This document shows positions 11,750 to 62,262 of a stretch of 64,000 nt of DNA, piece after piece. The position numbers and the translations under genes are program-made. Under the pieces are notes generated by a model. It was given only the letters and a program-made list of their open reading frames with translations, made no database searches and was not told where the DNA came from. The stretch covers positions 1 to 64,000 of IMG/VR virus record IMGVR_UViG_3300032675_000001, one strand, 5' to 3'. Every line of letters begins with the position of its first letter. Within the stretch, counting starts at the first letter, position 1.

Positions 11750-12094
11750 ATGAAACGACCAATATGCACTATTTGTAACAAGAATCATTGTGCTGTAAAC
11801 TATAGGCGTGACAACATCACTCACTATAGGAGTATCTGTGACGGTTGCAGAAAATCAAAATCCAAATCCAGACTTCGATTTTATTTGTGGGAGAAAGCTG
11901 GATACACAAAAAAACCCACATGTGACCTATGTGGGTTTAAGAGTGCCTATCCTAGTCAGATGACCGTGTTTCATATTGATGGTGATTTAAATAATGTATC
12001 TTTCACCAATCTCAGAAGCATATGTTTAAATTGTGTGGAGGTAGTCAAACGAAAAGCCGTCAATTGGAAAAGAGGGGATTTGATCCCAGATTGA
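11750..12094 (+). CDS. Small Cys-rich zinc-binding protein with HNH-like motif
   Basis: Several CxxC pairs plus FHIDGDLNN...NLRSICLNC. Confidence 0.7.
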   Translation: MKRPICTICNKNHCAVNYRRDNITHYRSICDGCRKSKSKSRLRFYLWEKAGYTKKPTCDLCGFKSAYPSQMTVFHIDGDLNNVSFTNLRSICLNCVEVVKRKAVNWKRGDLIPD

Positions 12095-12245
12095 TAAATA
12101 AAAAAGAAGAAATTCACAATTGGGTGAAAAGAGTGTTAGGTACGGTAAAAAGGACCCTGTATTTGAATGCCCACATTGTCATAAGAATGTAGCGGGCATG
12201 GGCAACTTCAAACGTTGGCATAATTCAAATTGTAGATTGGCGTAA
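12093..12245 (+). pseudogene. Relic of a homing-endonuclease cassette (late promoter plus C-terminal NUMOD3-like and zinc-finger segment)
   Basis: GATAAATAAAAAAG, then an open frame ...LGEKSVRYGKKDPVFECPHCHKNVAGMGNFKRWHNSNCRLA* that matches the C-termini of the intact cassettes; no nuclease domain. Confidence 0.7.
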
Positions 12246-20839: not shown

Positions 20840-22252
20840 TTATGCGTTGTTGATAGTGATGATAGGCATTGGCTGACCAGATACTCTTGATGTTTGACTA
20901 TCAATTGGATTGGTACCAGGATATGTATTTGCAGCATAGGCAGTACCGAATGTCGCAATGACAGTTGGGTAAGCGTTTGCAGCAATTGCAAATCCAGTTC
21001 CAGCAACGTTACCTGTTGCAGTGAAAGTAATGCCAGTCATATTGTCGCGTGCGCCAACTGATGTCCAGAGAGTATTGCCTGCGTTTGCAATAGTATACTG
21101 AGTACCGGCTACGAGTGCATTGGAATAAGTCCATGCAGTATATGCTTCTGATTGATAATCATCAAGATTGAACAAGTTCACAGTTGATGAGTTTGCGTAA
21201 GTACCTGTGATAATCATGGTGTTTGGCAACATTGCAGTATTTGCAACATTTGCAGTATAGCACTGTGATGTGAGACCAGAAGTTAATCCGATTACAAGAT
21301 ACTTGGTCTTGCCTTTTTGGCGCTGAATGAATCCAGTTTCAGGTGTTGCCTGAATGAATGCACTGTTTGAAACCGCAACTGCTGCATTTGCAGTGAATGT
21401 TATGGTATCTTGTAGAGCATTTGCAGTTACGCTTGCGTTAGATGACAATTGTACTGGTGCTCCACCAACTGATGTTGAAACAGTGAATGCAGCAGCGTTT
21501 GGAGTGGTCTTGACATAATAAACGTTGCCAGCAGTTAGCCCACCGAAGGTAGTGTCGAAAATGACAGGCGCATTTGCGATCAATGTCAATGCATTTCCTG
21601 AGGTACCGATTACGTTGCCAGTTGCGGTCGTGTTTGCAACTACAACTGCGTTATTACCTGGAGTACCAGTTACATAACCTACTGTAGTGTAGTCAGTTTG
21701 AATACCATTGATGTTTGCTACTGGGATTTGAATTACAGCACCGTTTGCTACGTTAGTAGCAAAGTTAGTATTCAATCCTGCTGCTCTTGGGCTAGTAGTT
21801 GAAGTGAAGAGAGTACCTGTACCGTTTGCACCGATTGCGACAGTTACGGAAACTTGTGAACCATATTGTGCAGTATTACCACCGACAACACCGTATGATG
21901 TTGCGTTAGTTGCAGTGTTTGATCCATTTGGATTACTGAATCCAGAATCAACCATACCAACAGTTGCTGCAATTGATTGACCAGTTGTAGTAGTTAGAGT
22001 TGGAACAGTCTGTGGCTGAACGCTAAGCTGAGTGCTTGATACCGAAAAGGTAGTTGAAGAAGCAACACTATTTACGTAGTAAGTAGTGCCAGCGACCAAC
22101 CCACCGATGTTTGCAGATACCACGAATGGCATACCTTTGGTTACGTTGGTTGCAGTTAGGTTACCAGAAGTAGTTACTAACTGAGTGGATGCAGTTGTTG
22201 CTGTAAGAGTTAGGACAGCCTGCGATTGTGCAATTTTTAGTGGACGACCCAT
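20840..22252 (-). CDS. Virion structural protein (T/A/N/G-rich)
   Basis: 470 aa; MGRPLK start, FIQRQKGKTKYLV, repeated GGLxAGxxYYV modules. Confidence 0.65.
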   Translation of the reverse strand: MGRPLKIAQSQAVLTLTATTASTQLVTTSGNLTATNVTKGMPFVVSANIGGLVAGTTYYVNSVASSTTFSVSSTQLSVQPQTVPTLTTTTGQSIAATVGMVDSGFSNPNGSNTATNATSYGVVGGNTAQYGSQVSVTVAIGANGTGTLFTSTTSPRAAGLNTNFATNVANGAVIQIPVANINGIQTDYTTVGYVTGTPGNNAVVVANTTATGNVIGTSGNALTLIANAPVIFDTTFGGLTAGNVYYVKTTPNAAAFTVSTSVGGAPVQLSSNASVTANALQDTITFTANAAVAVSNSAFIQATPETGFIQRQKGKTKYLVIGLTSGLTSQCYTANVANTAMLPNTMIITGTYANSSTVNLFNLDDYQSEAYTAWTYSNALVAGTQYTIANAGNTLWTSVGARDNMTGITFTATGNVAGTGFAIAANAYPTVIATFGTAYAANTYPGTNPIDSQTSRVSGQPMPIITINNA

Positions 22253-22366
22253 TTGTTTTTCCTTTTGTTATGCCGGGTTCTAGCCGGTACGCAGTGGGTG
22301 CTGCATAAACTCTCCGCATGAGAGTGTATGAAAGTATTTATACTTTTTGCGTAAAAATGAGGATGG

Positions 22367-31091: not shown

Positions 31092-32498
31092 TTATTTCTT
31101 AAGTGAGTTAAGCATTGCTTTGAGTTTCGCACCCTGTGTGTCGCCATGGACACGTTTTGACGGGTCTTCTAAAGTCTCTTGGACCAAATCATTAGTGGAA
31201 AACACTTTACTGGATTGTTTTATCTGACTCATAATCTGATTTGCACTTTGCTGTGGTTTATCACCAGAATCTGGGTCTTCGTCTGTAATACGCATCGTTT
31301 CAATGTTGTATTCTAAGTCAATCTTCTGACCAACACCAGTAGAACTACGAGATTTCATGCATTGAATCTGATACTTACCACGTTCACGCATACTTCTACT
31401 CGTGAAGATACCAAACACATAGTCGGCAGTATTGATCTTTGAAATACCACCTGCGATGTGACTATGATCAAACTCAATCTCTTCAACTGCACTACGATTT
31501 AACTGTGATGCAGTTACCATCAGAATACCCAACTCTTTCGCGAGATTGCGTAGTTCTTCCGATACATACTTGTCTTTGATAAACTGGTCATTGGGATTAA
31601 CCTTTACCGACACTGGCATAACCAAGTCAAGATAGTCAATCATCACAAAGTCAACTTTAATGCCTGTCTGAATCTGAACTTCTTTCAGGTATGCGCGGAT
31701 ATCATTGACATTGCTCTGTGCTGGTAGACCCTTGACGCGATACTGACCAGACTTCTTTGCCACCATCTTAACCTTGAGTTCCGCAGTATCCATGTCTCTG
31801 CGAATCTCTTTGGTGCTCATGCTTGTGAGCATTGCGTCGGTGCGAAGTGAAGTGAGTTCTTCTGAAAGTTCAAGGGTGATATACACGCCACTCAATCCAG
31901 CCTGTAGCCAGTTAAGTGCAATGTTCATCATAACGAGTGACTTACCCGAACCGGAACCACCCGCAAAGATATTCAACTCACCACGAGACATACCACCATA
32001 CATAACGCGGTCAAGCTGCGGCCAGCCCGTACTTACCTGACCACCAGCATTGAAGTATTTGTTGAGACGTTCTTTCGGATCGGCAAAGTAGTCTGTTCCC
32101 ATATCTCTCTGTAGAGAGATTTGAACAGCATCTTTCACCAACTTTTCTACTGGATTAAAGTCTCCCTTCTCCAATAAATCTGCCGCTTTAAGGATTGCGC
32201 GTTCAAGTTCTTTGCGTTTGGTGAATGATTCAAACTCTTCCAGAAACCAATCATAATGGCCGGAATCAAGACCTTCAATAGTTTCAATCTCAACTCCAGT
32301 TGTAGCTTTGATCTGAATAGGATCAGGCATAACACTATACTTGTTAGTGTGTTCCGCCAAAAAAGTAGCAACTGGCCTTAACGTGCGATCAAAGTTTTCT
32401 GCGTTCATGATGTTCATAACACGGGTATAAAGTTCCGCATTGGTGACCATCATTCTAAGAAACAAGGTTTGTATTTCTAAGTTATGCTCTGTTATCAA
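31092..32498 (-). CDS. Replicative DnaB-family helicase (gp41-like)
   Basis: GGSGSGKS Walker A, ITLELSE, IDYLDL, TASQLNR, MKSR; real start is probably TTG at 32498 rather than 32597. Confidence 0.92.
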   Translation of the reverse strand: MITEHNLEIQTLFLRMMVTNAELYTRVMNIMNAENFDRTLRPVATFLAEHTNKYSVMPDPIQIKATTGVEIETIEGLDSGHYDWFLEEFESFTKRKELERAILKAADLLEKGDFNPVEKLVKDAVQISLQRDMGTDYFADPKERLNKYFNAGGQVSTGWPQLDRVMYGGMSRGELNIFAGGSGSGKSLVMMNIALNWLQAGLSGVYITLELSEELTSLRTDAMLTSMSTKEIRRDMDTAELKVKMVAKKSGQYRVKGLPAQSNVNDIRAYLKEVQIQTGIKVDFVMIDYLDLVMPVSVKVNPNDQFIKDKYVSEELRNLAKELGILMVTASQLNRSAVEEIEFDHSHIAGGISKINTADYVFGIFTSRSMRERGKYQIQCMKSRSSTGVGQKIDLEYNIETMRITDEDPDSGDKPQQSANQIMSQIKQSSKVFSTNDLVQETLEDPSKRVHGDTQGAKLKAMLNSLKK

Positions 32499-32562
32499 GT
32501 TTTCTTCTCGCCATCTGAATCTTAATCTTACACTATGTTTGTAGTAAATGCAATAGTATTGG
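32482..32562 (-). pseudogene. Decayed duplicate of the primase 3' end
   Basis: Translates PILLHLLQT*CKIKIQMARRKLDNRA*, versus primase PTLLSILQNATTSKIKIELAKKRILRH. Confidence 0.75.
32525..32553 (-). promoter_or_regulatory. Candidate sigma70 promoter for the helicase, inside the primase remnant
   Basis: TTGCAT-N17-TAAGAT. Confidence 0.55.
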
Positions 32563-32646
32563 GATAAATAAAAGCGTAGTTCACGGTGGTGGAACACCTA
32601 ACTACTCTAATGTCATAGAAGGAAACATCAGCAATGACTATTTATT
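32563..32646 (+). ncRNA. Conserved structured endonuclease leader, copy 1
   Basis: GATAAATA..GTAGTT CAC GGTG gtggaa CACC T AACTAC TCTAA TGTC atagaagg AAACA TCAGCA ATG ACTATTTAT. Confidence 0.8.
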
Positions 32647-33284
32647 CACCTACTGGTCACCGAAAGATATATGAACATCATTTCGGTTCCATCCCCAAAG
32701 ATACAACCGGGCGCTCGTATGAGATACATCACATAGATGGTGATCATTCAAATAATGACCCAACTAACCTAAAATGTGTTACCATTCAAGAACATTATGA
32801 TATCCATTATTCGCAAGGTGATTGGGCCGCATGTCTGTTGATTGCGAACCGAATGAAAGTAACAACGAAGGAAAAATCCGAGTTGAGCACTCAGGCAAAT
32901 ACTAAACGAGTAGCAGACGGTTCACATAACTTCTTAGGAAAAAATAACCCATCACACGATAGAGTAGCAAAAGGTATACATAACTTTCAAGGTGAATCTA
33001 ATCCTGCCAAGCAAAAAGTTAAATCCGGCACATATCACATGCAAGAAAAAAATAATCCATCGAAACTTCGCGTAGATGATGGTACACACAACTTCTTAGG
33101 TGAAAGCAACCCATCACATAAAAGAGTGGCAAACGGCACGCACAACTGGCAACAACCAGTTAATGAAAATCATCCAACTCAGTTTAAATGGAAGTGTCCA
33201 CATTGTGATAAAGAGGGCAAAGGCAAAAGTATGTTTAAACGGTGGCATGGTAACAAATGCGGTTCACTGCTCCAAATGTCGTAA
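32634..33284 (+). CDS. Free-standing HNH homing endonuclease with GxHNF repeats and C-terminal zinc finger
   Basis: YEIHHIDGDHSNNDPTNL...EHYDIH; five 18-aa repeats; CPHC...RWHGNKC. Confidence 0.9.
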   Translation: MTIYSPTGHRKIYEHHFGSIPKDTTGRSYEIHHIDGDHSNNDPTNLKCVTIQEHYDIHYSQGDWAACLLIANRMKVTTKEKSELSTQANTKRVADGSHNFLGKNNPSHDRVAKGIHNFQGESNPAKQKVKSGTYHMQEKNNPSKLRVDDGTHNFLGESNPSHKRVANGTHNWQQPVNENHPTQFKWKCPHCDKEGKGKSMFKRWHGNKCGSLLQMS

Positions 33285-39872: not shown

Positions 39873-40571
39873 CTATTTTGGTTTCTGTTTGCACTTATCA
39901 CCATGATACTTACTGAAGTTTGGCTTGCCTACCATTTTATCACAGTAAATACAAGTTACTCGGATTGTATTTGGGTTCGGGATATTACGAGCAATGCGGG
40001 TAGCTTTTTGTTTTTGTATACTCTCGTCTGTGCGTTTATCGGTCCCGTTCTGTCTTCTAGTATCCCATCGTTTTGCGTTGCTTTCAGGCGTGTTTGGATT
40101 CATAGTTCCGTTACGTTTTCTAGATTCAAGCTGTTTGACAACCCGTTCTGGTGTTTGGGTATTAATGGTTCCATTCTTCCGGCGAGATTTTATTAAACTG
40201 GCAGTATGTTCCGGTGTCCTATCGTATGATCCGTTTTCTTTTCTAATAGTCACTGCCTTTTTGATTGTCTCTTCCGTGTGTTCTATGCCTTCGCCTGATT
40301 CTGGAATTAGATTAGCCCATGTCTTGTGTCCGAATTCGTCCCGTTCATACACTACATTCCATAACTCACTGTAGTATAATCCCCAGTGACGAAGTTCATC
40401 ATTAGTCTGACATTCCTTGAGTATTTCCGTAGTAACATCATATCCGTGTTTTCTAAGGTGCGGTTTCCATAGGTCACCTGACCCTTTGTATTTGTAGGGG
40501 TCTTGCGAGGTTTTTCCAAGGTATTTAAACCCTGTTTTGTTATGGGTCTTCTTATACAAATAAATAGTCAT
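39873..40571 (-). CDS. Free-standing GIY-YIG-like (Seg-like) homing endonuclease with RxxNGT repeats and zinc finger
   Basis: IYLYKKTH..TG.KYLGKT..DPYKYKGSG..W..HL...WANLIPESG; CIYC...YHGDKC. Confidence 0.85.
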   Translation of the reverse strand: MTIYLYKKTHNKTGFKYLGKTSQDPYKYKGSGDLWKPHLRKHGYDVTTEILKECQTNDELRHWGLYYSELWNVVYERDEFGHKTWANLIPESGEGIEHTEETIKKAVTIRKENGSYDRTPEHTASLIKSRRKNGTINTQTPERVVKQLESRKRNGTMNPNTPESNAKRWDTRRQNGTDKRTDESIQKQKATRIARNIPNPNTIRVTCIYCDKMVGKPNFSKYHGDKCKQKPK

Positions 40572-47048: not shown

Positions 47049-47561
47049 CTACACACAGGAGATTATGTTGTCAAGCAGAAAAACAGTAATCTTTGAAAAA
47101 CCTTCCTCTTCGGTTGGAAGGGTCAAAGACTTAACCATAGTCCCCAGTACATGCTGAGGAATAGTCTTGCCTTTACGAGAGTTTAGCCTGCGTTCCCACT
47201 CATCCTGTTCAGGAGTCGGAAACACCACTGCTTCAAACGTGTATCCATGATTCTTAAAGAAATCAATAAACCTCTTACGAGACTTTACCGACAGATTAGT
47301 GCGATCAATGATCACGCTTTCACCATTTTCTGCACACTCAGTAGCATAGTCCCACATGACCTTTTCAGCAAACCCAACGAGTTCCTTGAATCCCTGATCA
47401 TACGTGTAGCCATACTGGTGTGCTACTTCCTCAATGATCTTGTCAGTGGAAAGCACCACATCATGGCCACGCTTGAACACGTTTTCCACCCTACGCTGAG
47501 CAGTCCACGTGGACTTCCCAGAGCCAGGCACACCGACAAGAATAGTACAGGTCTTAGTCAT
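47049..47561 (-). CDS. Polynucleotide-kinase-like P-loop kinase (kinase domain only)
   Basis: GVPGSGKST, IIDRTNL...R; downstream of the RNA ligase. Confidence 0.75.
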   Translation of the reverse strand: MTKTCTILVGVPGSGKSTWTAQRRVENVFKRGHDVVLSTDKIIEEVAHQYGYTYDQGFKELVGFAEKVMWDYATECAENGESVIIDRTNLSVKSRKRFIDFFKNHGYTFEAVVFPTPEQDEWERRLNSRKGKTIPQHVLGTMVKSLTLPTEEEGFSKITVFLLDNIISCV

Positions 47562-47721
47562 CTTCTTTTTCCTTCAATAGATTGCGAGTTCGTTCCACAA
47601 TACAGTTGCCTTTGTCTTCCAAAAAATGTGCCTGACAATAGCCGTGATGATCATGATGACATGGTTCATCGTGAATGTCAAGCCATTCTTGTAGCAGTTT
47701 GGTTAATTCGTTAGTCATCAT
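47554..47721 (-). CDS. Small His/Cys-rich protein (55 aa)
   Basis: MMTNELTKLLQEWLDIHDEPCHHDHHGYCQAH...C; promoter TTGACA-N17-TATAAA at 47739-47767. Confidence 0.5.
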   Translation of the reverse strand: MMTNELTKLLQEWLDIHDEPCHHDHHGYCQAHFLEDKGNCIVERTRNLLKEKEDD

Positions 47722-47774
47722 AACTACCCTTCATTGTTTTTATATACAAAAATAATTCATATGTCAAGAAGAGA

Positions 47775-47854
47775 GATAAATAGTCGTGAGTCGCGGAAGC
47801 CCAATTCCCACTCACTCTAATGCTATGAAGGAGCAATCAGCATGACTACTTATT
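47775..47854 (+). ncRNA. Conserved structured endonuclease leader, copy 3
   Basis: GATAAATAGTC GTGAGT CGC GGAA gcccaa TTCC C ACTCAC TCTAA TGCT atgaagg AGCA ATCAGC ATG ACTACTTAT. Confidence 0.8.
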
Positions 47855-48540
47855 CAAAAAACAGAACACCCAGCAAAATTTATCGTAAAATTTACGAAGA
47901 TTACTATGGTCCAATCCCAATAGATGCTGATGGAAAATCCTATGAAATTCATCATATAGACGGCAATCATAAAAATAACGACCCATCTAATTTAATCGCA
48001 GTATCTGCACAAGAACATTATGATATTCATTATTCCCAAGGCGATTGGGGAGCTTGCTGGTTAATGGCAGAAAGACTGAAGTTGTCATCAAAAGAAATAT
48101 CAGAATTGGCACGATTGGCGGCGAATAGAAGAGTAGAAAATGGAACTCACAACTTCCAAGATTCGGAGTCCCAGAGAGAAAAAGCACTGAGAATGGTCCG
48201 TGAAGGGACAAATGTTTTTGTTGGCGGCGAAATTCAACGCCAACACAATAGACGCAGAGTAAATGATGGTTCACACCATTTACTCAAACGTCCCGATGGA
48301 ACAAGTCACTCATCAGATAGAGTTAATGCAGGAACCCATAATTTTCAAGACAGCAAGTCTCAGCAGGAAAGAGCATTGAAAAGGGTTAAAAATAAAACTC
48401 ACAATTTTCAAAAAAGAGAAGGATATGAACATCCTTCAACGTCCGAAAAATGGTATTGCCATACTTGCAAAAAAGAAGGAAAGAATGCGGGAAGTAGAGG
48501 TAGATACCACAAAGGACATGAGGTTACTATAATTAAATAG
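47842..48540 (+). CDS. Free-standing HNH homing endonuclease with GTHNF repeats and zinc finger
   Basis: YEIHHIDGNHKNNDPSNL...EHYDIH; CHTC...RYH. Confidence 0.9.
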   Translation: MTTYSKNRTPSKIYRKIYEDYYGPIPIDADGKSYEIHHIDGNHKNNDPSNLIAVSAQEHYDIHYSQGDWGACWLMAERLKLSSKEISELARLAANRRVENGTHNFQDSESQREKALRMVREGTNVFVGGEIQRQHNRRRVNDGSHHLLKRPDGTSHSSDRVNAGTHNFQDSKSQQERALKRVKNKTHNFQKREGYEHPSTSEKWYCHTCKKEGKNAGSRGRYHKGHEVTIIK

Positions 48541-49768
48541 CATTAAACTTTACGTTGTGGAACCATTTGTCTCGCAGTGCTTCATACTTAGTATTGCGAG
48601 ACAAATTGTTAATAATAACACTATATATTGCATCTTTAACTTGCTCTTTAGTGCCTTCTTTATCCCACAAAGAGAACATAATAGGGCGCGTGAAGCTATC
48701 AAAGTTGGTTGCGTGATTAATTGCAAATTCTTTACGATCACCGATATACTTATCAGATTTATAAAATTGAACATCAGACCAAATTTTATTAACCCTCTGA
48801 TTGATTGCTTTGTTAAAGTCATTTTCAAACACAGTAATTGCATCGCGATCCTCTACGGGTAGATGTGCCTTAACATCATCGATGGTGTTTTCCAATATCA
48901 TTTGCACTACATTGCGATCTTGCAGGATTGCTTCCTTCGCCTTATGAATCTGGAGATACCAATGGCACTTCAACTTCAACATATGCCCATCATCAAAACG
49001 AACCACGAATCCTTCAAGGTCTTCCAGATCACGAACGTATTCAAGGAAAGCCTTCATATCAGTCTGCGGCTCGAATGCACGAACTACAGGAAGATATCCG
49101 CCCTTAAATGTAAATGCATTAACATTACCGACCATAGCATCATGTGTAAGATATCGGCCCGTGTCCATCTGGCGAATAGCAGTCAGAACAAGCTGATCTT
49201 CTTTATAATCAAGAACGATACGTTGCTTACGCGAACACCATTCAAAGATAGGCGTTAGGCCAGCCAGAAGCATTTCAACTGCAAACTCTTCATAAAGAGG
49301 ATTGTTCTTGACGAACTCCTCAACAGGCTTTGCCACATCGGTAGCACCCATCTTCGTGCCCCAGATCATCTGACCATCCACAATGAACGGTGCAATCATG
49401 GAACCATCCAGCTTCTCAAGGATCACATGAGGACGCGACAGATCAATGACATGATCCTGAGTCTCTTCACGCTCGTTCACGTTGAAGAACTTATGGAACG
49501 GACGACGAATGATGTCACCAGTCTTCGAGTCGAAGATGATACCACGACATTCACGGCGAATACGAGCATGAAGATTTTCTATTTCATAATGATCATGATT
49601 ACCACGCAAATCATTAGAAGCAATCACATCAGGAAACGTATCAGCCATCATCACATTGTAAGAAATACAAGTATAAGGACCTTTATCCGCAATAATGAAC
49701 TCGTCCCTGCCTTCGATAGCAGGGAGCACATCAGAAATATTTTTAATAATCGGGAAGGTATAATTCAT
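48533..49768 (-). CDS. rnlA: RNA ligase 1 (T4 Rnl1-like)
   Basis: RECRGIIF, PFHKFFN, EKLDGS motif I, FEW, EGFVV, LKLK. Confidence 0.92.
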   Translation of the reverse strand: MNYTFPIIKNISDVLPAIEGRDEFIIADKGPYTCISYNVMMADTFPDVIASNDLRGNHDHYEIENLHARIRRECRGIIFDSKTGDIIRRPFHKFFNVNEREETQDHVIDLSRPHVILEKLDGSMIAPFIVDGQMIWGTKMGATDVAKPVEEFVKNNPLYEEFAVEMLLAGLTPIFEWCSRKQRIVLDYKEDQLVLTAIRQMDTGRYLTHDAMVGNVNAFTFKGGYLPVVRAFEPQTDMKAFLEYVRDLEDLEGFVVRFDDGHMLKLKCHWYLQIHKAKEAILQDRNVVQMILENTIDDVKAHLPVEDRDAITVFENDFNKAINQRVNKIWSDVQFYKSDKYIGDRKEFAINHATNFDSFTRPIMFSLWDKEGTKEQVKDAIYSVIINNLSRNTKYEALRDKWFHNVKFNAI

Positions 49769-49829: not shown

Positions 49830-49911
49830 GATAAATAAAGTTGTAGTTCGCGGAATGGGGATTCCCAACTACTCTAACGCTTAAGAGGAGCAATCAGCAT
49901 GAATATTTATC
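49830..49911 (+). ncRNA. Conserved structured endonuclease leader, copy 4
   Basis: GATAAATAAAGTT GTAGTT CGC GGAAT gggg ATTCC C AACTAC TCTAA CGCT taagagg AGCA ATCAGC ATG AATATTTATC. Confidence 0.8.
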
Positions 49912-50627
49912 ACGCGACAAATGACCGTTCACCTTACACATATTTGATCGGATGGACAAAACATAATATATGGTATTATGGAGTAAGATATGCTAAAGGG
50001 TGTCACCCATCCGAATTCTGGATAAAATACAAAACTTCATCGAATTATGTAGCAGACTTCGTGGCGGTGCATGGTGATCCAGATATTATACAAATAAGAA
50101 AAACATTTACTAATGTTGAATCCGCCAGGCAGTGGGAAACCAAAGTACTCAAAAGATTAAAAGTAATCAAATTAGAGAAATGGCTGAATAAACATGATGG
50201 TAAGGCAGTAGACCCTGCAATCCTATCTATCACAACAGCCCGCATGAATGCGAACATGACTTCGGAAGAAAAAACTCAACGCGGAAAGAAAGGTATGGAT
50301 TCAAGATGGTCTACGGATTCTTCCCTTCGTCCAATAATAGAAATAGTTTGTCCTGTTTGCGGAACACGCATTATCACAAGGGACCCGCATATATCCACGT
50401 GCAGTAAAAAATGTGGATATATTAATAGACCATCACAAAAAAACATACCAAAACTGAAAAACAGTAAAACATATATCATTCAATATCCAGATAATACTGA
50501 ACACATTATTACAGGACTTCGTAAATTCTGCATAGAACATTGTCTCACAGAAAGAATACTATCCAGTACTCTTTCCGGTAAAAGAAACAAACAACATAAG
50601 GGATACAAAATTGTAAAGGCATTATAA
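49899..50627 (+). CDS. Free-standing GIY-YIG-like homing endonuclease with zinc ribbon and NUMOD1-like C-terminus
   Basis: PYTYLIGW...WYYGVRY...YKTSS...WETKVL...WLN; CPVCG...CSKKC; FCIEH...HKGY. Confidence 0.8.
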   Translation: MNIYHATNDRSPYTYLIGWTKHNIWYYGVRYAKGCHPSEFWIKYKTSSNYVADFVAVHGDPDIIQIRKTFTNVESARQWETKVLKRLKVIKLEKWLNKHDGKAVDPAILSITTARMNANMTSEEKTQRGKKGMDSRWSTDSSLRPIIEIVCPVCGTRIITRDPHISTCSKKCGYINRPSQKNIPKLKNSKTYIIQYPDNTEHIITGLRKFCIEHCLTERILSSTLSGKRNKQHKGYKIVKAL

Positions 50628-50642
50628 TTCTATTTGATCGTC

Positions 50643-51053
50643 TTACCCCTTAATTGATCCAAAGAACCGAATGATGTTTTCCATCACGGTGTCCGTGCGT
50701 TTACTGTTGCAGGAGCTACACACGAACTCACAGTTATGACAAAGAGTTGATCCATAACGATACGGAATAACGTGGTCTGCCGTTGCCTCAGGACAAAATC
50801 CATATTCGTTAATATGGAACTGAACGCCACAATCTTTACATTTGAAATCCTGCAAAGACAAAAGGTAAATTTTTCTTTGCCTATCTTTTTCGCTTTTGCT
50901 AAAAGACCTGCTACTTCTCCGAATCCTCTTAGGCGGCAGCCGACTATTGAGGAAGTTCTGCAAAGCAATATAGTTGCGGTGCATTCCTTGGGTTAGAACC
51001 AATTCGGATTTCACGGTAAACAATCTCTCTTTTGCTACATTCTCACCATACAC
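50643..51053 (-). CDS. HNH nuclease (McrA-like zinc-binding type, no conserved leader)
   Basis: CKDCG...ADHVIP...G...NCEFVCSSCNSKR. Confidence 0.8.
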   Translation of the reverse strand: MYGENVAKERLFTVKSELVLTQGMHRNYIALQNFLNSRLPPKRIRRSSRSFSKSEKDRQRKIYLLSLQDFKCKDCGVQFHINEYGFCPEATADHVIPYRYGSTLCHNCEFVCSSCNSKRTDTVMENIIRFFGSIKG

Positions 51054-60839: not shown

Positions 60840-61529
60840 TCACTTGATATCTAGTGGACGAGCCTTAGTTGCGACGATGCAGAAATATTTCTCTTTGACT
60901 GTCTTCTGTCCTTCTTCTCCATGTGACAGATTAACATCAAACTCAAGATTGTTAAACTTATCAATGTTGAAGCCGGTACGAATAAGAAGGGCGGCCAACT
61001 GATTAGCGCCGAAAACGCTATAATGATTTGGATTGTATTCGTGACCGCGTTCACAATCTGGTGCTGGAACTTCAATATAAATCTTTGAGCCTTGTTTCAA
61101 TACGCGATTGTATTCCATTAATGTGAAAATAGGATATGGTGAATGTTCAAGTGATTGGCGAGCAAAGATGAAATCTACAGATTCGTCATAATATCCCTCT
61201 TTCTGAGGCAAGAATGACATATCATACTTTTTAATAGTATGACCATTTGCTTCACAAATCTTGATATCTTCTGGACTCAAAGAAATTCCAACAAGATCGG
61301 TATAGCCACGGTCTTTCATTTCATCTAAGAAGTATCCTACGCCACATCCTATATCAAGAATCTTGGAATCCTTTGGGAGTTCCATAGGGTCAATATAAGT
61401 TTCTACTACCTGAGTGGTCAACTTCTTGTGGAAGTCGCTTTCCCCCTCATCATAGATGTGGCAATTAACTAGCCACTCATAGTAAAATTTAAGTTTAACA
61501 GCGTCAAAAACTTGGTTTATATCAATCAT
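60840..61529 (-). CDS. Class I SAM-dependent methyltransferase
   Basis: ILDIGCGVG, DFIFARQSLEH, RVLKQG..YIEVP; real start MIDINQ at 61529. Confidence 0.85.
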   Translation of the reverse strand: MIDINQVFDAVKLKFYYEWLVNCHIYDEGESDFHKKLTTQVVETYIDPMELPKDSKILDIGCGVGYFLDEMKDRGYTDLVGISLSPEDIKICEANGHTIKKYDMSFLPQKEGYYDESVDFIFARQSLEHSPYPIFTLMEYNRVLKQGSKIYIEVPAPDCERGHEYNPNHYSVFGANQLAALLIRTGFNIDKFNNLEFDVNLSHGEEGQKTVKEKYFCIVATKARPLDIK

Positions 61530-61593
61530 TTGTAATCCTGTATAAGTTATAAAATTACTTATGCTATGTTCAATCGTTAAATTTTTATTTGAT

Positions 61594-61675
61594 GATAAAT
61601 AAAAGTGTAGTTCGCGGGCGTCCACTCCCCAACTACTCTAATGCTATAAAGGAGCGATCAGCATGTCTATTTATC
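61594..61675 (+). ncRNA. Conserved structured endonuclease leader, copy 5
   Basis: GATAAATAAAAGT GTAGTT CGC GGG cgtccact CCC C AACTAC TCTAA TGCT ataaagg AGCG ATCAGC ATG TCTATTTATC. Confidence 0.8.
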
Positions 61676-62262
61676 GTAAAATATACGAACAGAATTTTGG
61701 ACCTATTCCAAAAGAGCCAAACGGAAGAACTTATGAAATTCACCATATTGATGGCAATCATGATAACAATGACCCTATAAATCTCAAGGCTGTAACAATC
61801 CAAGAACACTATGATATTCATTATTCACAGCAAGATTGGGGAGCTTGTCTATTAATAGGTAAGCGTCTCAATCTTTCTCCTGAAGAAATTTCTAGCATAT
61901 CAAGTAGAAATGCAAAAAAACAAATTGAGAACGGAACGCATCCTTTTCTTAATCCTGAAGTTGGTCGTAAAAGCATTATTAATGGAACGCACAATTTTTT
62001 CGGTGGTAGTATACAAAGTAAAAGCAATCAACGTAGACTAGCAAATGGTTCGCATCATTTATTAAGAGAAAATAGCCCACAAATACAAAATAAAACGCAT
62101 CATTTTTTCGGAGGTGATGTTCAGCGAAATAACAATTTTACGAGATTGGCAAATGGGACTCATCCATCGCAGACTGTTTGGAAATGTGAACATTGCGGCA
62201 AAACTGGACGAGGCAAAACTAATTATAATAGATATCACGGCGATTCGTGTAAAAATATTTAA
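61663..62262 (+). CDS. Free-standing HNH homing endonuclease with GTHxF repeats and zinc finger
   Basis: YEIHHIDGNHDNNDPINL...EHYDIH; CEHC...RYHGDSC. Confidence 0.9.
   Translation: MSIYRKIYEQNFGPIPKEPNGRTYEIHHIDGNHDNNDPINLKAVTIQEHYDIHYSQQDWGACLLIGKRLNLSPEEISSISSRNAKKQIENGTHPFLNPEVGRKSIINGTHNFFGGSIQSKSNQRRLANGSHHLLRENSPQIQNKTHHFFGGDVQRNNNFTRLANGTHPSQTVWKCEHCGKTGRGKTNYNRYHGDSCKNI

What the first reader, a model, noticed from the sequence alone, without database searches (positions are those of the whole stretch)
32906..33180. Tandem GxHNF repeat arrays between the HNH domain and zinc finger: candidate modular nucleic-acid-reading units
Seen: the 32634 protein has five units with an 18-aa period (RVADGSHNFLGKNNPSHD, RVAKGIHNFQGESNPAKQ, KVKSGTYHMQEKNNPSKL, RVDDGTHNFLGESNPSHK, RVANGTHNWQ...). 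The 47842 and 61663 proteins each also have five (R/K)xxxG(T/S)H(N/H/P)(F/L)-type units with different linkers. Their HNH domains are very similar (YEIHHIDG.H.NNDP.NL..V..QEHYDIHYSQ.DW.AC). Inference: a constant nuclease plus a variable repeat array at three different loci suggests specificity is set by the repeats, which could be reprogrammable. The repeats might instead bind the leader RNA.
Basis: partly seen in the sequence, partly recalled or inferred. Interest (0 to 1): 0.65.

Follow-up and report, generated by a model that had tools for sequence, protein, structure and literature searches.

The report
Unnamed DNA-binding repeats in phage homing endonucleases
Three selfish "homing" nuclease genes in a giant freshwater phage carry a real but never-named string of short repeats, also present unnoticed in the classic T-even enzyme I-TevIII, that most likely lies along the DNA and helps choose the cutting site; there is no sign that it is a simple reprogrammable code.

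Summary
Three ORFs (32634, 47842 and 61663, all + strand) each have an N-terminal HNH_3 nuclease, five units with the core R-V-x-N-G-T-H-N-F-L-G, and a C-terminal zinc finger.

They are free-standing relatives of I-TevIII, at 35% identity over the whole length. I-TevIII has the same five units, which its own biochemical paper did not notice.

No Pfam or NCBIfam family (NUMOD1, 3 and 4 included), PDB sequence or PDB fold matches the array. AlphaFold2 models each unit confidently as one short helix plus a loop.

Across more than 1,500 relatives, units come in lengths of 17, 18 or 21 residues and arrays hold mostly 4-7 units. The same arrays also follow GIY-YIG nucleases.

A natural chimera, P0082, joins a different nuclease to an array and zinc finger 68% identical to those of HEG A. 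It sits at exactly A's insertion site, the primase/helicase junction. So array plus finger behave as the targeting module.

Published I-TevIII truncations and footprints place the units on DNA, probably in the minor groove.

A TALE-like code is not supported, and leader-RNA binding is unlikely because the leader also precedes repeat-less endonuclease genes.

Verdict: a new, unnamed NUMOD-like repeat class within a known enzyme family. Interest is moderate.

The parts
32634..33284 (+). HEG A: free-standing I-TevIII-like HNH homing endonuclease gene (216 aa)
   Evidence: ORF. Pfam HNH_3 E 2.3e-13. PHROG 12324 E 9e-33. 35% identity to I-TevIII over aa 9-209. AlphaFold2 pLDDT 91.3.
32667..32807 (+). 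HNH catalytic core of A (aa 12-58; HH at aa 32-33, N45, H54)
   Evidence: Pfam match at aa 9-54. These residues are invariant in a 105-sequence alignment. They correspond to I-TevIII H26, H27, N39 and H48, which were shown to be catalytic (PMC1865063).
32907..33176 (+). Five 18-residue GxHNF units of A, starting at nt 32907, 32961, 33015, 33069 and 33123
   Evidence: Each unit is modelled as an 8-residue helix plus a loop of about 10 residues, pLDDT 83-93.
33195..33260 (+). C-terminal CCHC zinc finger of A (aa 188-209)
   Evidence: C188 is invariant and C191, H205 and C209 are at least 90% conserved. It is homologous to the second zinc finger of I-TevIII. Both I-TevIII fingers are needed for DNA binding (PMC1865063).
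32565..32633 (+). Conserved leader of cassette A: TAAATAAA box, covarying hairpin, Shine-Dalgarno sequence
32482..32531 (-). Leftover copy of the original primase 3' end. It still overlaps the helicase start (TTG at 32498) and marks the insertion site of cassette A.
   Evidence: Endonuclease-less relatives have the primase stop overlapping the helicase start.
47842..48540 (+). HEG B (232 aa). Five 21-residue units start at nt 48130, 48193, 48256, 48319 and 48382. CCHH finger at 48457-48519.
   Evidence: It is inserted between the RNA ligase and kinase genes.
61663..62262 (+). HEG C (199 aa). Five units start at nt 61921, 61972, 62035, 62080 and 62143. CCHC finger at 62185-62250.
   Evidence: It is inserted upstream of the methyltransferase gene, and 73 of 74 relatives lack it.
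39873..40571 (-). Co-resident SegE-like GIY-YIG endonuclease gene with four related 'RxxNG[ST]...TPE' units of 20-21 residues and the same CCHC finger. Its nuclease type is the one found in the chimera P0082.

Best explanation
The three genes are free-standing homing endonuclease genes of the I-TevIII family. Each sits in its own small cassette (promoter-like box, 5' hairpin, ORF) inserted antisense between conserved phage genes.

The GxHNF units form an extended chain of helix-plus-loop beads. The chain links the N-terminal HNH nuclease to the C-terminal zinc finger.

The most likely mechanism has three steps:
- The zinc finger anchors the protein on one end of a long asymmetric site in the endonuclease-less allele.
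- The basic repeat chain lies along the DNA, probably in the minor groove as in I-TevIII. It adds contacts and sets how far the nuclease reaches.
- The nuclease then cuts at a distance.

The near-invariant G-T-H-N-F-L-G turn is the structural constant. The short helix between turns, which varies in sequence and comes in three lengths, is the part that differs between enzymes aimed at different sites.

Array plus finger act together as the targeting module, and nature recombines this module with different nuclease domains.

Shown here: the repeats, the homology to I-TevIII, the modular distribution, and the insertion and mobility.
Inferred here: DNA contact (from I-TevIII biochemistry) and the role of the helices (from conservation patterns).
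For: 1. Whole-length homology to I-TevIII, which has the same five units at aa 107, 128, 152, 173 and 197.

2. I-TevIII biochemistry, mapped here onto the units (PMC1865063):
- The region aa 96-194 is protease-sensitive.
- 166C (units 4-5 plus fingers) binds DNA, but 194C (unit 5 plus fingers) does not.
- 145C (units 3-5) gives a footprint that stops short of the cleavage-site side reached by the full-length protein.
- The footprints have a 3' stagger, which suggests minor-groove binding.

3. Modularity. The same arrays follow GIY-YIG domains: seven region-search hits carry Pfam PF01541; P0121 scans at Pfam E 7e-6 and TIGR01453 67.9 bits, above its cut-off.

4. The chimera P0082. Residues 1-95 are about 70% identical to the SegE-like nuclease of window ORF 39873-40571. 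Residues 96-226 are 68% identical to the array and finger of A. It occupies the same antisense slot at the primase 3' end and helicase start, with the same leftover primase end.

5. Paralogues at different sites share 62-64% of the nuclease but only 34-40% of array plus finger. Orthologues at the same site keep unit-specific helix sequences: C against L096 and L098, and B against L186 for units 1-3.

6. The arrays are net basic: K+R against D+E is 13/8, 22/13 and 12/4.

7. AlphaFold2 is confident locally (pLDDT 83-93) but the pTM of the array-only model is 0.49 and no globular fold matches (best Z 2.2). This fits an extended chain.

8. Homing behaviour:
- 78 of 80 relatives have the primase directly followed by the helicase.
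- Many relatives have the ligase directly followed by the kinase.
- 73 of 74 lack cassette C.
- HEG B is 100% identical in a phage whose flanking genes are only 91% identical.
Against: - No DNA complex was modelled or measured for these proteins. DNA contact rests on I-TevIII, which is only 35% identical.
- The P0082 argument cannot separate the array from the zinc finger. P0082 and A could also share a site simply by common descent of the whole cassette.
- L106 has an HNH endonuclease gene at the same primase/helicase junction, yet its array is only 49% identical to A's against a background of 41%.
- Unit 4's helix differs completely between B and its same-site orthologue in L186. At least some units therefore tolerate replacement.
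Confidence: 0.68

Rival explanations
1. Passive ruler. The array is only a flexible spacer that sets the distance between the zinc-finger anchor and the nuclease, as the I-TevI linker does. It reads no bases, and specificity lies in the finger and in the nuclease's own cleavage-site preference.
For: - Unit lengths are quantised (17, 18 or 21 residues) and array length varies widely, 71-140 residues.
- The core is highly conserved.
- The I-TevIII array region is protease-sensitive.
- Unit 4's helix was replaced in the L186 orthologue of B with no change of site.
Against: - I-TevIII 194C keeps both fingers yet fails to bind, while 166C, which adds unit 4, binds.
- Removing units 1-2 shortens the footprint. 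The units therefore touch DNA and add affinity.
- Unit-specific helix residues are conserved between same-site orthologues.
Confidence: 0.2
2. TALE-like code. Each unit reads a fixed number of base pairs through a few variable residues, so the arrays could be rebuilt to order.
For: - The arrays are tandem and modular, with recent perfect unit duplications in P0122 and P0123.
- There is a constant turn plus a variable helix.
- Arrays differ between enzymes at different sites.
Against: - There is no hypervariable residue pair. Variation is moderate and spread over about 8 positions.
- Units have three or more lengths.
- A's five helices are much alike, yet its target region shows no matching five-fold DNA periodicity.
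- A unit swap was tolerated at the same site.
- A zinc finger or another C-terminal domain is present in the arrays examined.
Confidence: 0.07
3. The repeats bind the conserved leader RNA or hairpin of their own cassette (autoregulation), or they mediate protein-protein contacts or dimerisation.
For: - A covarying hairpin precedes all three genes.
- I-TevI is known to autoregulate (my own recollection, not checked here).
- I-TevIII dimerises through aa 194-241, a stretch that includes unit 5.
Against: - The same leader precedes endonuclease genes without these repeats: window 49899-50627 and the L006 GIY-YIG/NUMOD3 gene.
- The leader is near-constant while the arrays diverge.
- The I-TevIII dimer interface lies almost entirely outside units 1-4.
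Confidence: 0.05

Closest known systems
I-TevIII (nrdB-intron HNH homing endonuclease of phage RB3 and T-even relatives; PHROG 12324)
   Same: - N-terminal HNH_3 nuclease with the same catalytic residues.
- A helical connector, then five GxH(N/H/P)(F/L) units.
- A C-terminal CxxC...H...C zinc finger.
- 35% identity over aa 9-209.
   Different: - The window's genes are free-standing and antisense to their neighbours, not intron-encoded.
- They have one zinc finger instead of two.
- Their units are shorter (17-21 residues against 21-24).
- They carry their own conserved promoter and hairpin leader.
NUMOD3 (PF07460), the tandem DNA-binding motif of I-TevI, SegB and I-HmuI-type endonucleases
   Same: - The same place in the architecture, between the nuclease and a C-terminal DNA-binding element.
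- Found with both HNH and GIY-YIG nucleases.
- Short units of about 17-20 residues, each a Gly/His-containing loop plus one helix.
- A shared G-x-x-N-P element.
   Different: - No HMM match, even at E <= 10.
- Profile-profile comparison aligns only the GxxNP piece, and both inputs had been chosen by that pattern.
- The protein-language-model similarity is 0.77, below the level that counts as evidence.
- The conserved core G-T-H-N-F-L-G is absent from NUMOD3.
I-TevI linker and zinc-finger 'molecular ruler'
   Same: A nuclease tethered by an extended, DNA-tracking segment to a distal anchor, cutting at a distance from the insertion site (PMC1865063).
   Different: In I-TevI the zinc finger organises the linker and does not bind DNA. 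In I-TevIII the fingers do bind DNA. The I-TevI linker is not a repeat array of this kind.
TAL effector repeats
   Same: Tandem helical repeats placed next to a nuclease-compatible position.
   Different: - TALE repeats are 33-35 residues, nearly identical, with one hypervariable di-residue and a rule of one repeat per base pair.
- None of these features is seen here.

Membership tests
I-TevIII-like HNH homing endonucleases | HNH_3 (beta-beta-alpha-metal) nuclease at the N-terminus, with the catalytic H-H...N...H residues | tested here: met
   Pfam PF13392 at E 2e-13, 6e-11 and 4e-10, all above the cut-off. H32, H33, N45 and H54 are invariant or nearly so and align with I-TevIII H26, H27, N39 and H48.
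I-TevIII-like HNH homing endonucleases | Homology beyond the nuclease: repeat region plus C-terminal zinc finger | tested here: met
   tblastn gives 35% identity over aa 9-209, E 8e-36. PHROG 12324 matches at E 1e-33 to 3e-39. I-TevIII also has five units.
I-TevIII-like HNH homing endonucleases | Encoded inside a group I intron | tested here: not met
   All three lie between genes, antisense to their neighbours. Rfam reports no intron in the window.
I-TevIII-like HNH homing endonucleases | Two C-terminal zinc fingers and dimeric double-strand cleavage leaving 2-nt 3' overhangs | tested here: inconclusive
   Only one finger is present. Cleavage chemistry and oligomeric state cannot be tested with these tools.
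Free-standing homing endonuclease genes (mobile) | Presence/absence polymorphism at a fixed site between conserved genes, and a gene more conserved than its flanks | tested here: met
   A is absent at the primase/helicase junction in 78 of 80 relatives. B is absent in many relatives, and 100% identical where the flanks are only 91%. C is absent in 73 of 74.
NUMOD3 (PF07460) | Match to the family HMM at or above the gathering score | tested here: not met
   No hit at E <= 1 for the whole proteins or at E <= 10 for the array alone. As a positive control, genuine NUMOD3 hits were found in the same phage genome.
NUMOD3 (PF07460) | Tandem short motif between the nuclease and a distal DNA-binding element, shared by the HNH and GIY-YIG families | tested here: met
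   The L006 GIY-YIG gene has NUMOD3-like units plus the same type of zinc finger at the same junction.
NUMOD3 (PF07460) | Binds the DNA minor groove | not testable with these tools
   Only indirect evidence: the 3' stagger of the I-TevIII footprints.
TALE-like programmable repeats | Near-identical units with a hypervariable specificity di-residue and a fixed unit length | tested here: not met
   Per-position frequencies from 375 units show variation spread over many positions and unit lengths of 17, 18, 21 and 24 residues.

The most novel reading that the evidence does not exclude
The GTHNF units are a fourth kind of natural, tandem, unit-wise DNA-reading module, after zinc fingers, TALEs and pentatricopeptide-like repeats. 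Each variable helix would contact a defined short DNA step, and the 17, 18 and 21-residue classes would set the step length. Arrays could then be rebuilt to retarget small HNH or GIY-YIG nucleases.
Probability: 0.1. Interest if true: 0.85.

Novelty: new variant of a known kind. Interest (0 to 1): 0.5.

Why it matters
The DNA-binding half of I-TevIII has been described since 2007 only as a protease-sensitive region followed by two zinc fingers, with "no additional sequence conservation". This work shows that the region is an ordered repeat array with a sharp consensus, and that the array defines a large family:
- more than 1,500 clusters at 90% identity in metagenomes;
- exchange between HNH and GIY-YIG nucleases;
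- no Pfam, NCBIfam or PDB counterpart.

Naming and modelling the array would improve the annotation of phage homing endonucleases. It would also explain the published I-TevIII truncation results unit by unit.

It also gives a concrete system for asking how small monomeric or dimeric nucleases reach and recognise sites of 30-40 bp. That system consists of three paralogues at three known insertion sites, plus a natural nuclease-swap chimera.

The prospect of engineering the arrays is speculative.

Tried and rejected
No match for the whole proteins at E <= 1, nor for the arrays alone at E <= 10. NCBIfam gave nothing relevant. Sub-threshold 'Suprabasin GxHH repeat' hits on P0121, P0082 and P0124 are compositional.
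- **PDB by sequence profile.** No hit at E <= 1.
- **Fold searches.** The whole model matches only HNH domains: I-HmuI 1u3e by Foldseek at E 0.58, and at Z 4.8 by VIA-align, plus generic helical repeats at Z <= 6.1. The array-only model gives a best Z of 2.2 and a best Foldseek E of 4.9. In the ESM Atlas, only the protein's own family reaches TM > 0.5.
- **Protein-language-model neighbours of the array.** A NUMOD3 cluster appears at 0.77, below the level that counts as evidence.
- **hhalign of 18-residue units against 8 NUMOD3 segments.** Only GxxNP aligns, and both sets had been picked with that pattern, so the test is circular and inconclusive.
- **Literature.** A full-text search for the motif strings found nothing relevant. 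The I-TevIII paper and the His-Me finger classification do not describe the repeats. The library holds open-access papers only, so an earlier description elsewhere cannot be excluded.
- **Near-identical DNA in named phages.** None found.
- **Does array similarity predict a shared insertion site better than nuclease similarity?** Tested on 56 distinct HEGs. Both are higher for same-site pairs (nuclease part 0.70 against 0.57; array part 0.62 against 0.41). Most same-site pairs are simply orthologues, so this does not separate the two domains.
- **Not run.** The large representative-protein search, the reads tools and the complex predictor (which takes no DNA). No sequence was taken for human.

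Full report
**What is there**

The window is part of a jumbo phage genome. It equals positions 9726-73725 of a 117-kb IMG/VR record. Its coordinates nearly coincide with those of a complete 360,683-bp record with terminal repeats, G002.

- A: 32634-33284, 216 aa.
- B: 47842-48540, 232 aa.
- C: 61663-62262, 199 aa.

Each begins with a Pfam HNH_3 domain (E 2e-13, 6e-11 and 4e-10). Each matches PHROG 12324, 'intron-like DNA endonuclease' (E 9e-33 to 3e-39).

**The repeats are real**

- B has five 21-residue units at aa 97, 118, 139, 160 and 181.
- C has five units at aa 87, 104, 125, 140 and 161, with mixed spacing.

Self-similarity at the best lag is far above shuffled sequence for A (z = 13.6) and B (z = 8.9). 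For C it is weaker (z = 2.8), because C's spacing is irregular.

At DNA level, A's units are only 46-76% identical and Tandem Repeats Finder sees nothing. These are old repeats kept by selection on the protein, not recent slippage.

After the array comes one zinc finger. It is CCHC in A and C and CCHH in B.

**What the proteins are**

The best named relatives are I-TevIII proteins, the nrdB-intron endonucleases of T-even phages. Identity is 35% over aa 9-209 of A, E 8e-36.

I read the 269-aa I-TevIII ORF from one such phage (L001:2495-3304). It has the same five units, at aa 107, 128, 152, 173 and 197, followed by two zinc fingers. Its numbering agrees with the published catalytic residues H26, H27, N39 and H48.

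The array is therefore a family trait of I-TevIII-type enzymes, not a peculiarity of this phage.

[quoted passage not shown] It does not mention repeats.

**Is the repeat a known family?**

The evidence says no:
- No Pfam family, NUMOD1, 3 and 4 included, matches the proteins at E <= 1 or the arrays alone at E <= 10.
- NCBIfam has nothing relevant.
- A profile of 105 family members finds no PDB sequence at E <= 1.
- A full-text search for the motif strings found nothing relevant.

Genuine NUMOD3 motifs do occur elsewhere in the same phage genome, so the negative result is not a failure of the method.

NUMOD3 and the new unit share a G-x-x-N-P element and a loop-plus-helix plan of similar length. 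Profile-profile alignment covers only that element and was circular. The language-model similarity of 0.77 is below the level that counts.

I therefore treat the array as working like NUMOD3 without being a demonstrated member of it.

**Structure**

AlphaFold2 with a 105-sequence alignment gives mean pLDDT 91.3. Every unit is modelled as an 8-residue helix followed by a loop of about 10 residues. The helix starts at the N-P-S cap and runs through R-V-x-x. The loop holds G-T-H-N-F-L-G.

The array and finger modelled alone give pLDDT 90.5 but pTM only 0.49. Local structure is therefore confident while the overall shape is not. No PDB chain resembles this model: best Z 2.2 over 48,161 representative chains and best Foldseek E 4.9. 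The whole model matches only HNH domains such as I-HmuI.

This is what an extended, non-globular chain that orders on DNA would look like. It also agrees with the protease sensitivity of I-TevIII residues 96-194.

**Family-wide pattern**

A word-based search found at least 1,551 clusters at E <= 1e-5. Nearly all are viral or metagenomic, and they carry only the HNH_3 annotation.

In the best 120:
- Unit spacing is quantised at 17, 18 or 21 residues (98, 101 and 166 cases), rarely 24.
- Arrays hold mostly 4-7 units.
- The distance from the first unit to the zinc finger ranges from 71 to 140 residues (5th to 95th percentile).

The core is R-[VI]-x-[ND]-G-T-H-[NHP]-F-L-G, with G, T and H at or above 88-97%. 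Variation lies at positions 3, 4 and 8 and in the helix-forming linker, and it is spread over about eight positions. There is no hypervariable pair of the TALE kind.

**Modularity**

Restricting the search to the array (aa 88-182) recovered proteins in which the same units follow a GIY-YIG nuclease. These are P0121, P0123, P0125, P0128, P0129, P0134 and P0137.
- P0121 matches Pfam PF01541 at E 7e-6 and TIGR01453 'group I intron endonuclease' at 67.9 bits against a cut-off of 56.
- These proteins have 6-8 units and a different C-terminal domain in place of the zinc finger.
- Some show perfect recent unit duplications.

The most telling case is P0082 (226 aa), which is a chimera:
- Its first 95 residues are about 70% identical to the SegE-like GIY-YIG nuclease of window ORF 39873-40571.
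- Its residues 96-226 are 68% identical to the array and finger of A, and unit-specific oddities are kept (NFQG in unit 2, a degenerate unit 3, GTHNWQQPV...ENHPTQFKW in unit 5).
- In five metagenomic contigs it lies antisense, overlapping the 3' end of the primase gene, with a leftover copy of the original primase end and the helicase start on its other side. That is exactly the anatomy of cassette A.

A different nuclease joined to the same array and finger therefore sits at the same site.

Window ORF 39873-40571 itself has four related units of 20-21 residues ('RxxNG[ST]...TPE') and the same finger. The unit class is therefore broader than GxHNF.

**The cassettes are mobile insertions**

*Cassette A.* In 78 of 80 related viral contigs, the primase gene is followed directly by the helicase gene, with a gap of 30-65 nt between the matched stretches. 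In the six relatives inspected at sequence level, the primase stop overlaps the helicase start. In the window, about 800 nt are inserted there. A new primase end is supplied under the 3' end of the endonuclease gene, and the old primase end survives at 32482-32531 next to the helicase TTG start at 32498.

One relative, L006, has a GIY-YIG/NUMOD3-like gene with the same type of finger in that junction. Another, L106, has a divergent HNH gene of this family there.

*Cassette B.* Many relatives have the RNA ligase gene directly followed by the kinase gene. Two contigs (L180, L181) carry HEG B at 100% amino-acid identity although their ligase and kinase are only 91% identical. That is a signature of recent horizontal spread.

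*Cassette C.* 73 of 74 relatives lack an endonuclease gene upstream of the methyltransferase gene.

**Does the array set specificity?**

Evidence in favour:
- Among A, B and C, the nuclease is 62-64% identical but array plus finger only 34-40%.
- Same-site orthologues keep unit-specific helix sequences: C against L096 and L098 throughout, and B against L186 in units 1-3.
- The P0082 chimera sits at A's site.
- I-TevIII 166C (units 4-5 plus fingers) binds DNA but 194C (unit 5 plus fingers) does not.
- 145C, which lacks units 1-2, protects less DNA toward the cleavage site.
- The footprints have a 3' stagger, which suggests the minor groove.
- The arrays are net basic.

Evidence calling for caution:
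- The array was never separated from the finger.
- Same-site similarity is confounded with common descent.
- L106's array at A's site is barely above background similarity.
- Unit 4's helix was replaced in the L186 orthologue of B without a change of site.

I conclude that array plus finger is the targeting module and that the units contact DNA (confidence about 0.7). Whether the helices read bases or mainly add affinity and reach is open. A simple rebuildable code is unlikely (about 0.1).

**The leader**

A conserved stretch of about 70 nt precedes A, B and C. It consists of:
- a TAAATAAA box resembling a T4 late promoter;
- a hairpin whose two helices covary (10 pairs, 97.5% paired, 5 pairs changed on both sides, 0 of 500 shuffles as good);
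- a Shine-Dalgarno sequence;
- ATG-NNN-ATTTAT.

The same leader precedes endonuclease genes without GxHNF units: window 49899-50627, the L006 GIY-YIG gene, and others. It is therefore a shared expression signal of free-standing endonuclease genes in this phage group, not a partner of the repeats.

Control of T4 endonuclease genes by hairpins and by late or middle promoters is documented (PMC2330249).

**Verdict**

- The genes are new members of the I-TevIII family.
- The repeat array is an unnamed NUMOD-like module, which I rate as a new variant of a known kind.
- Interest is moderate (0.5).

Noticed in passing
window 32565-32633, ~47770-47841, 61596-61662, 49832-49898 (+); also L082:3936-4000, L006:2757-2820, L023 and L074: A conserved leader of about 70 nt lies upstream of several different endonuclease genes. 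It has a TAAATAAA promoter-like box, a two-helix hairpin with covariation (5 of 10 pairs changed on both sides, 0 of 500 shuffles as good), a Shine-Dalgarno sequence, and ATG-NNN-ATTTAT. That last stretch is conserved across HNH and GIY-YIG ORFs, and ATTTAT is complementary to ATAAAT in the box. No Rfam family matches.
   Followed up: partly
window 39873-40571 (-): SegE-like GIY-YIG endonuclease gene (232 aa) with four 'RxxNG[ST]...TPE' units of 20-21 residues and a CCHC finger. The units are a sister type of the GxHNF repeat. Its nuclease domain is about 70% identical to that of the chimera P0082.
   Followed up: partly
window 49899-50627 (+) and 50643-51053 (-): Two more nuclease-type genes sit beside the RNA ligase gene. 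One is a 242-aa ORF driven by the same leader, with no Pfam match and no GxHNF units. The other is a 136-aa HNH protein (Pfam PF01844, E 1e-6).
   Followed up: partly
window 12120-12245 (+) and 11750-12094 (+): A 41-aa ORF that is only a CCHC finger of the endonuclease type, either a remnant or a mini-protein. Next to it is a 114-aa ORF with weak HNH-like and zinc-ribbon matches.
   Followed up: no
window 32482-32531 (-) and 31092-32498 (-): A leftover duplicate of the primase 3' end lies beside the helicase. The helicase most likely starts at the TTG at 32498, not at the GTG at 32597 of the longest ORF. The extra N-terminal residues of that ORF are the reverse translation of the leader. The same applies to the methyltransferase ORF 60840-61625.
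   Followed up: partly
L180 and L181 (IMG/VR contigs) against window 47049-49768: HEG B is 100% identical at protein level in phages whose flanking ligase and kinase are only 91% identical, which suggests recent transfer of the cassette between phages.
   Followed up: partly
L082-L086: 142-3812: In the P0082 contigs, the helicase N-terminal coding part lies in a separate ORF of about 200 aa. It is separated from the DnaB_C-matching ORF by a DUF7487 ORF of about 590 aa, possibly an intein or another mobile insertion.
   Followed up: no
window 22250-22325 (-): Rfam 'freshwater-2 RNA' (RF02980) at 61 bits, above its gathering score. This fits a freshwater origin for the phage.
   Followed up: no
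G002 (complete 360,683-bp genome; coordinates close to the window's): The genome has 13 places matching the array-plus-finger profile and 6 NUMOD3 matches. It is unusually rich in homing endonuclease genes.
   Followed up: partly
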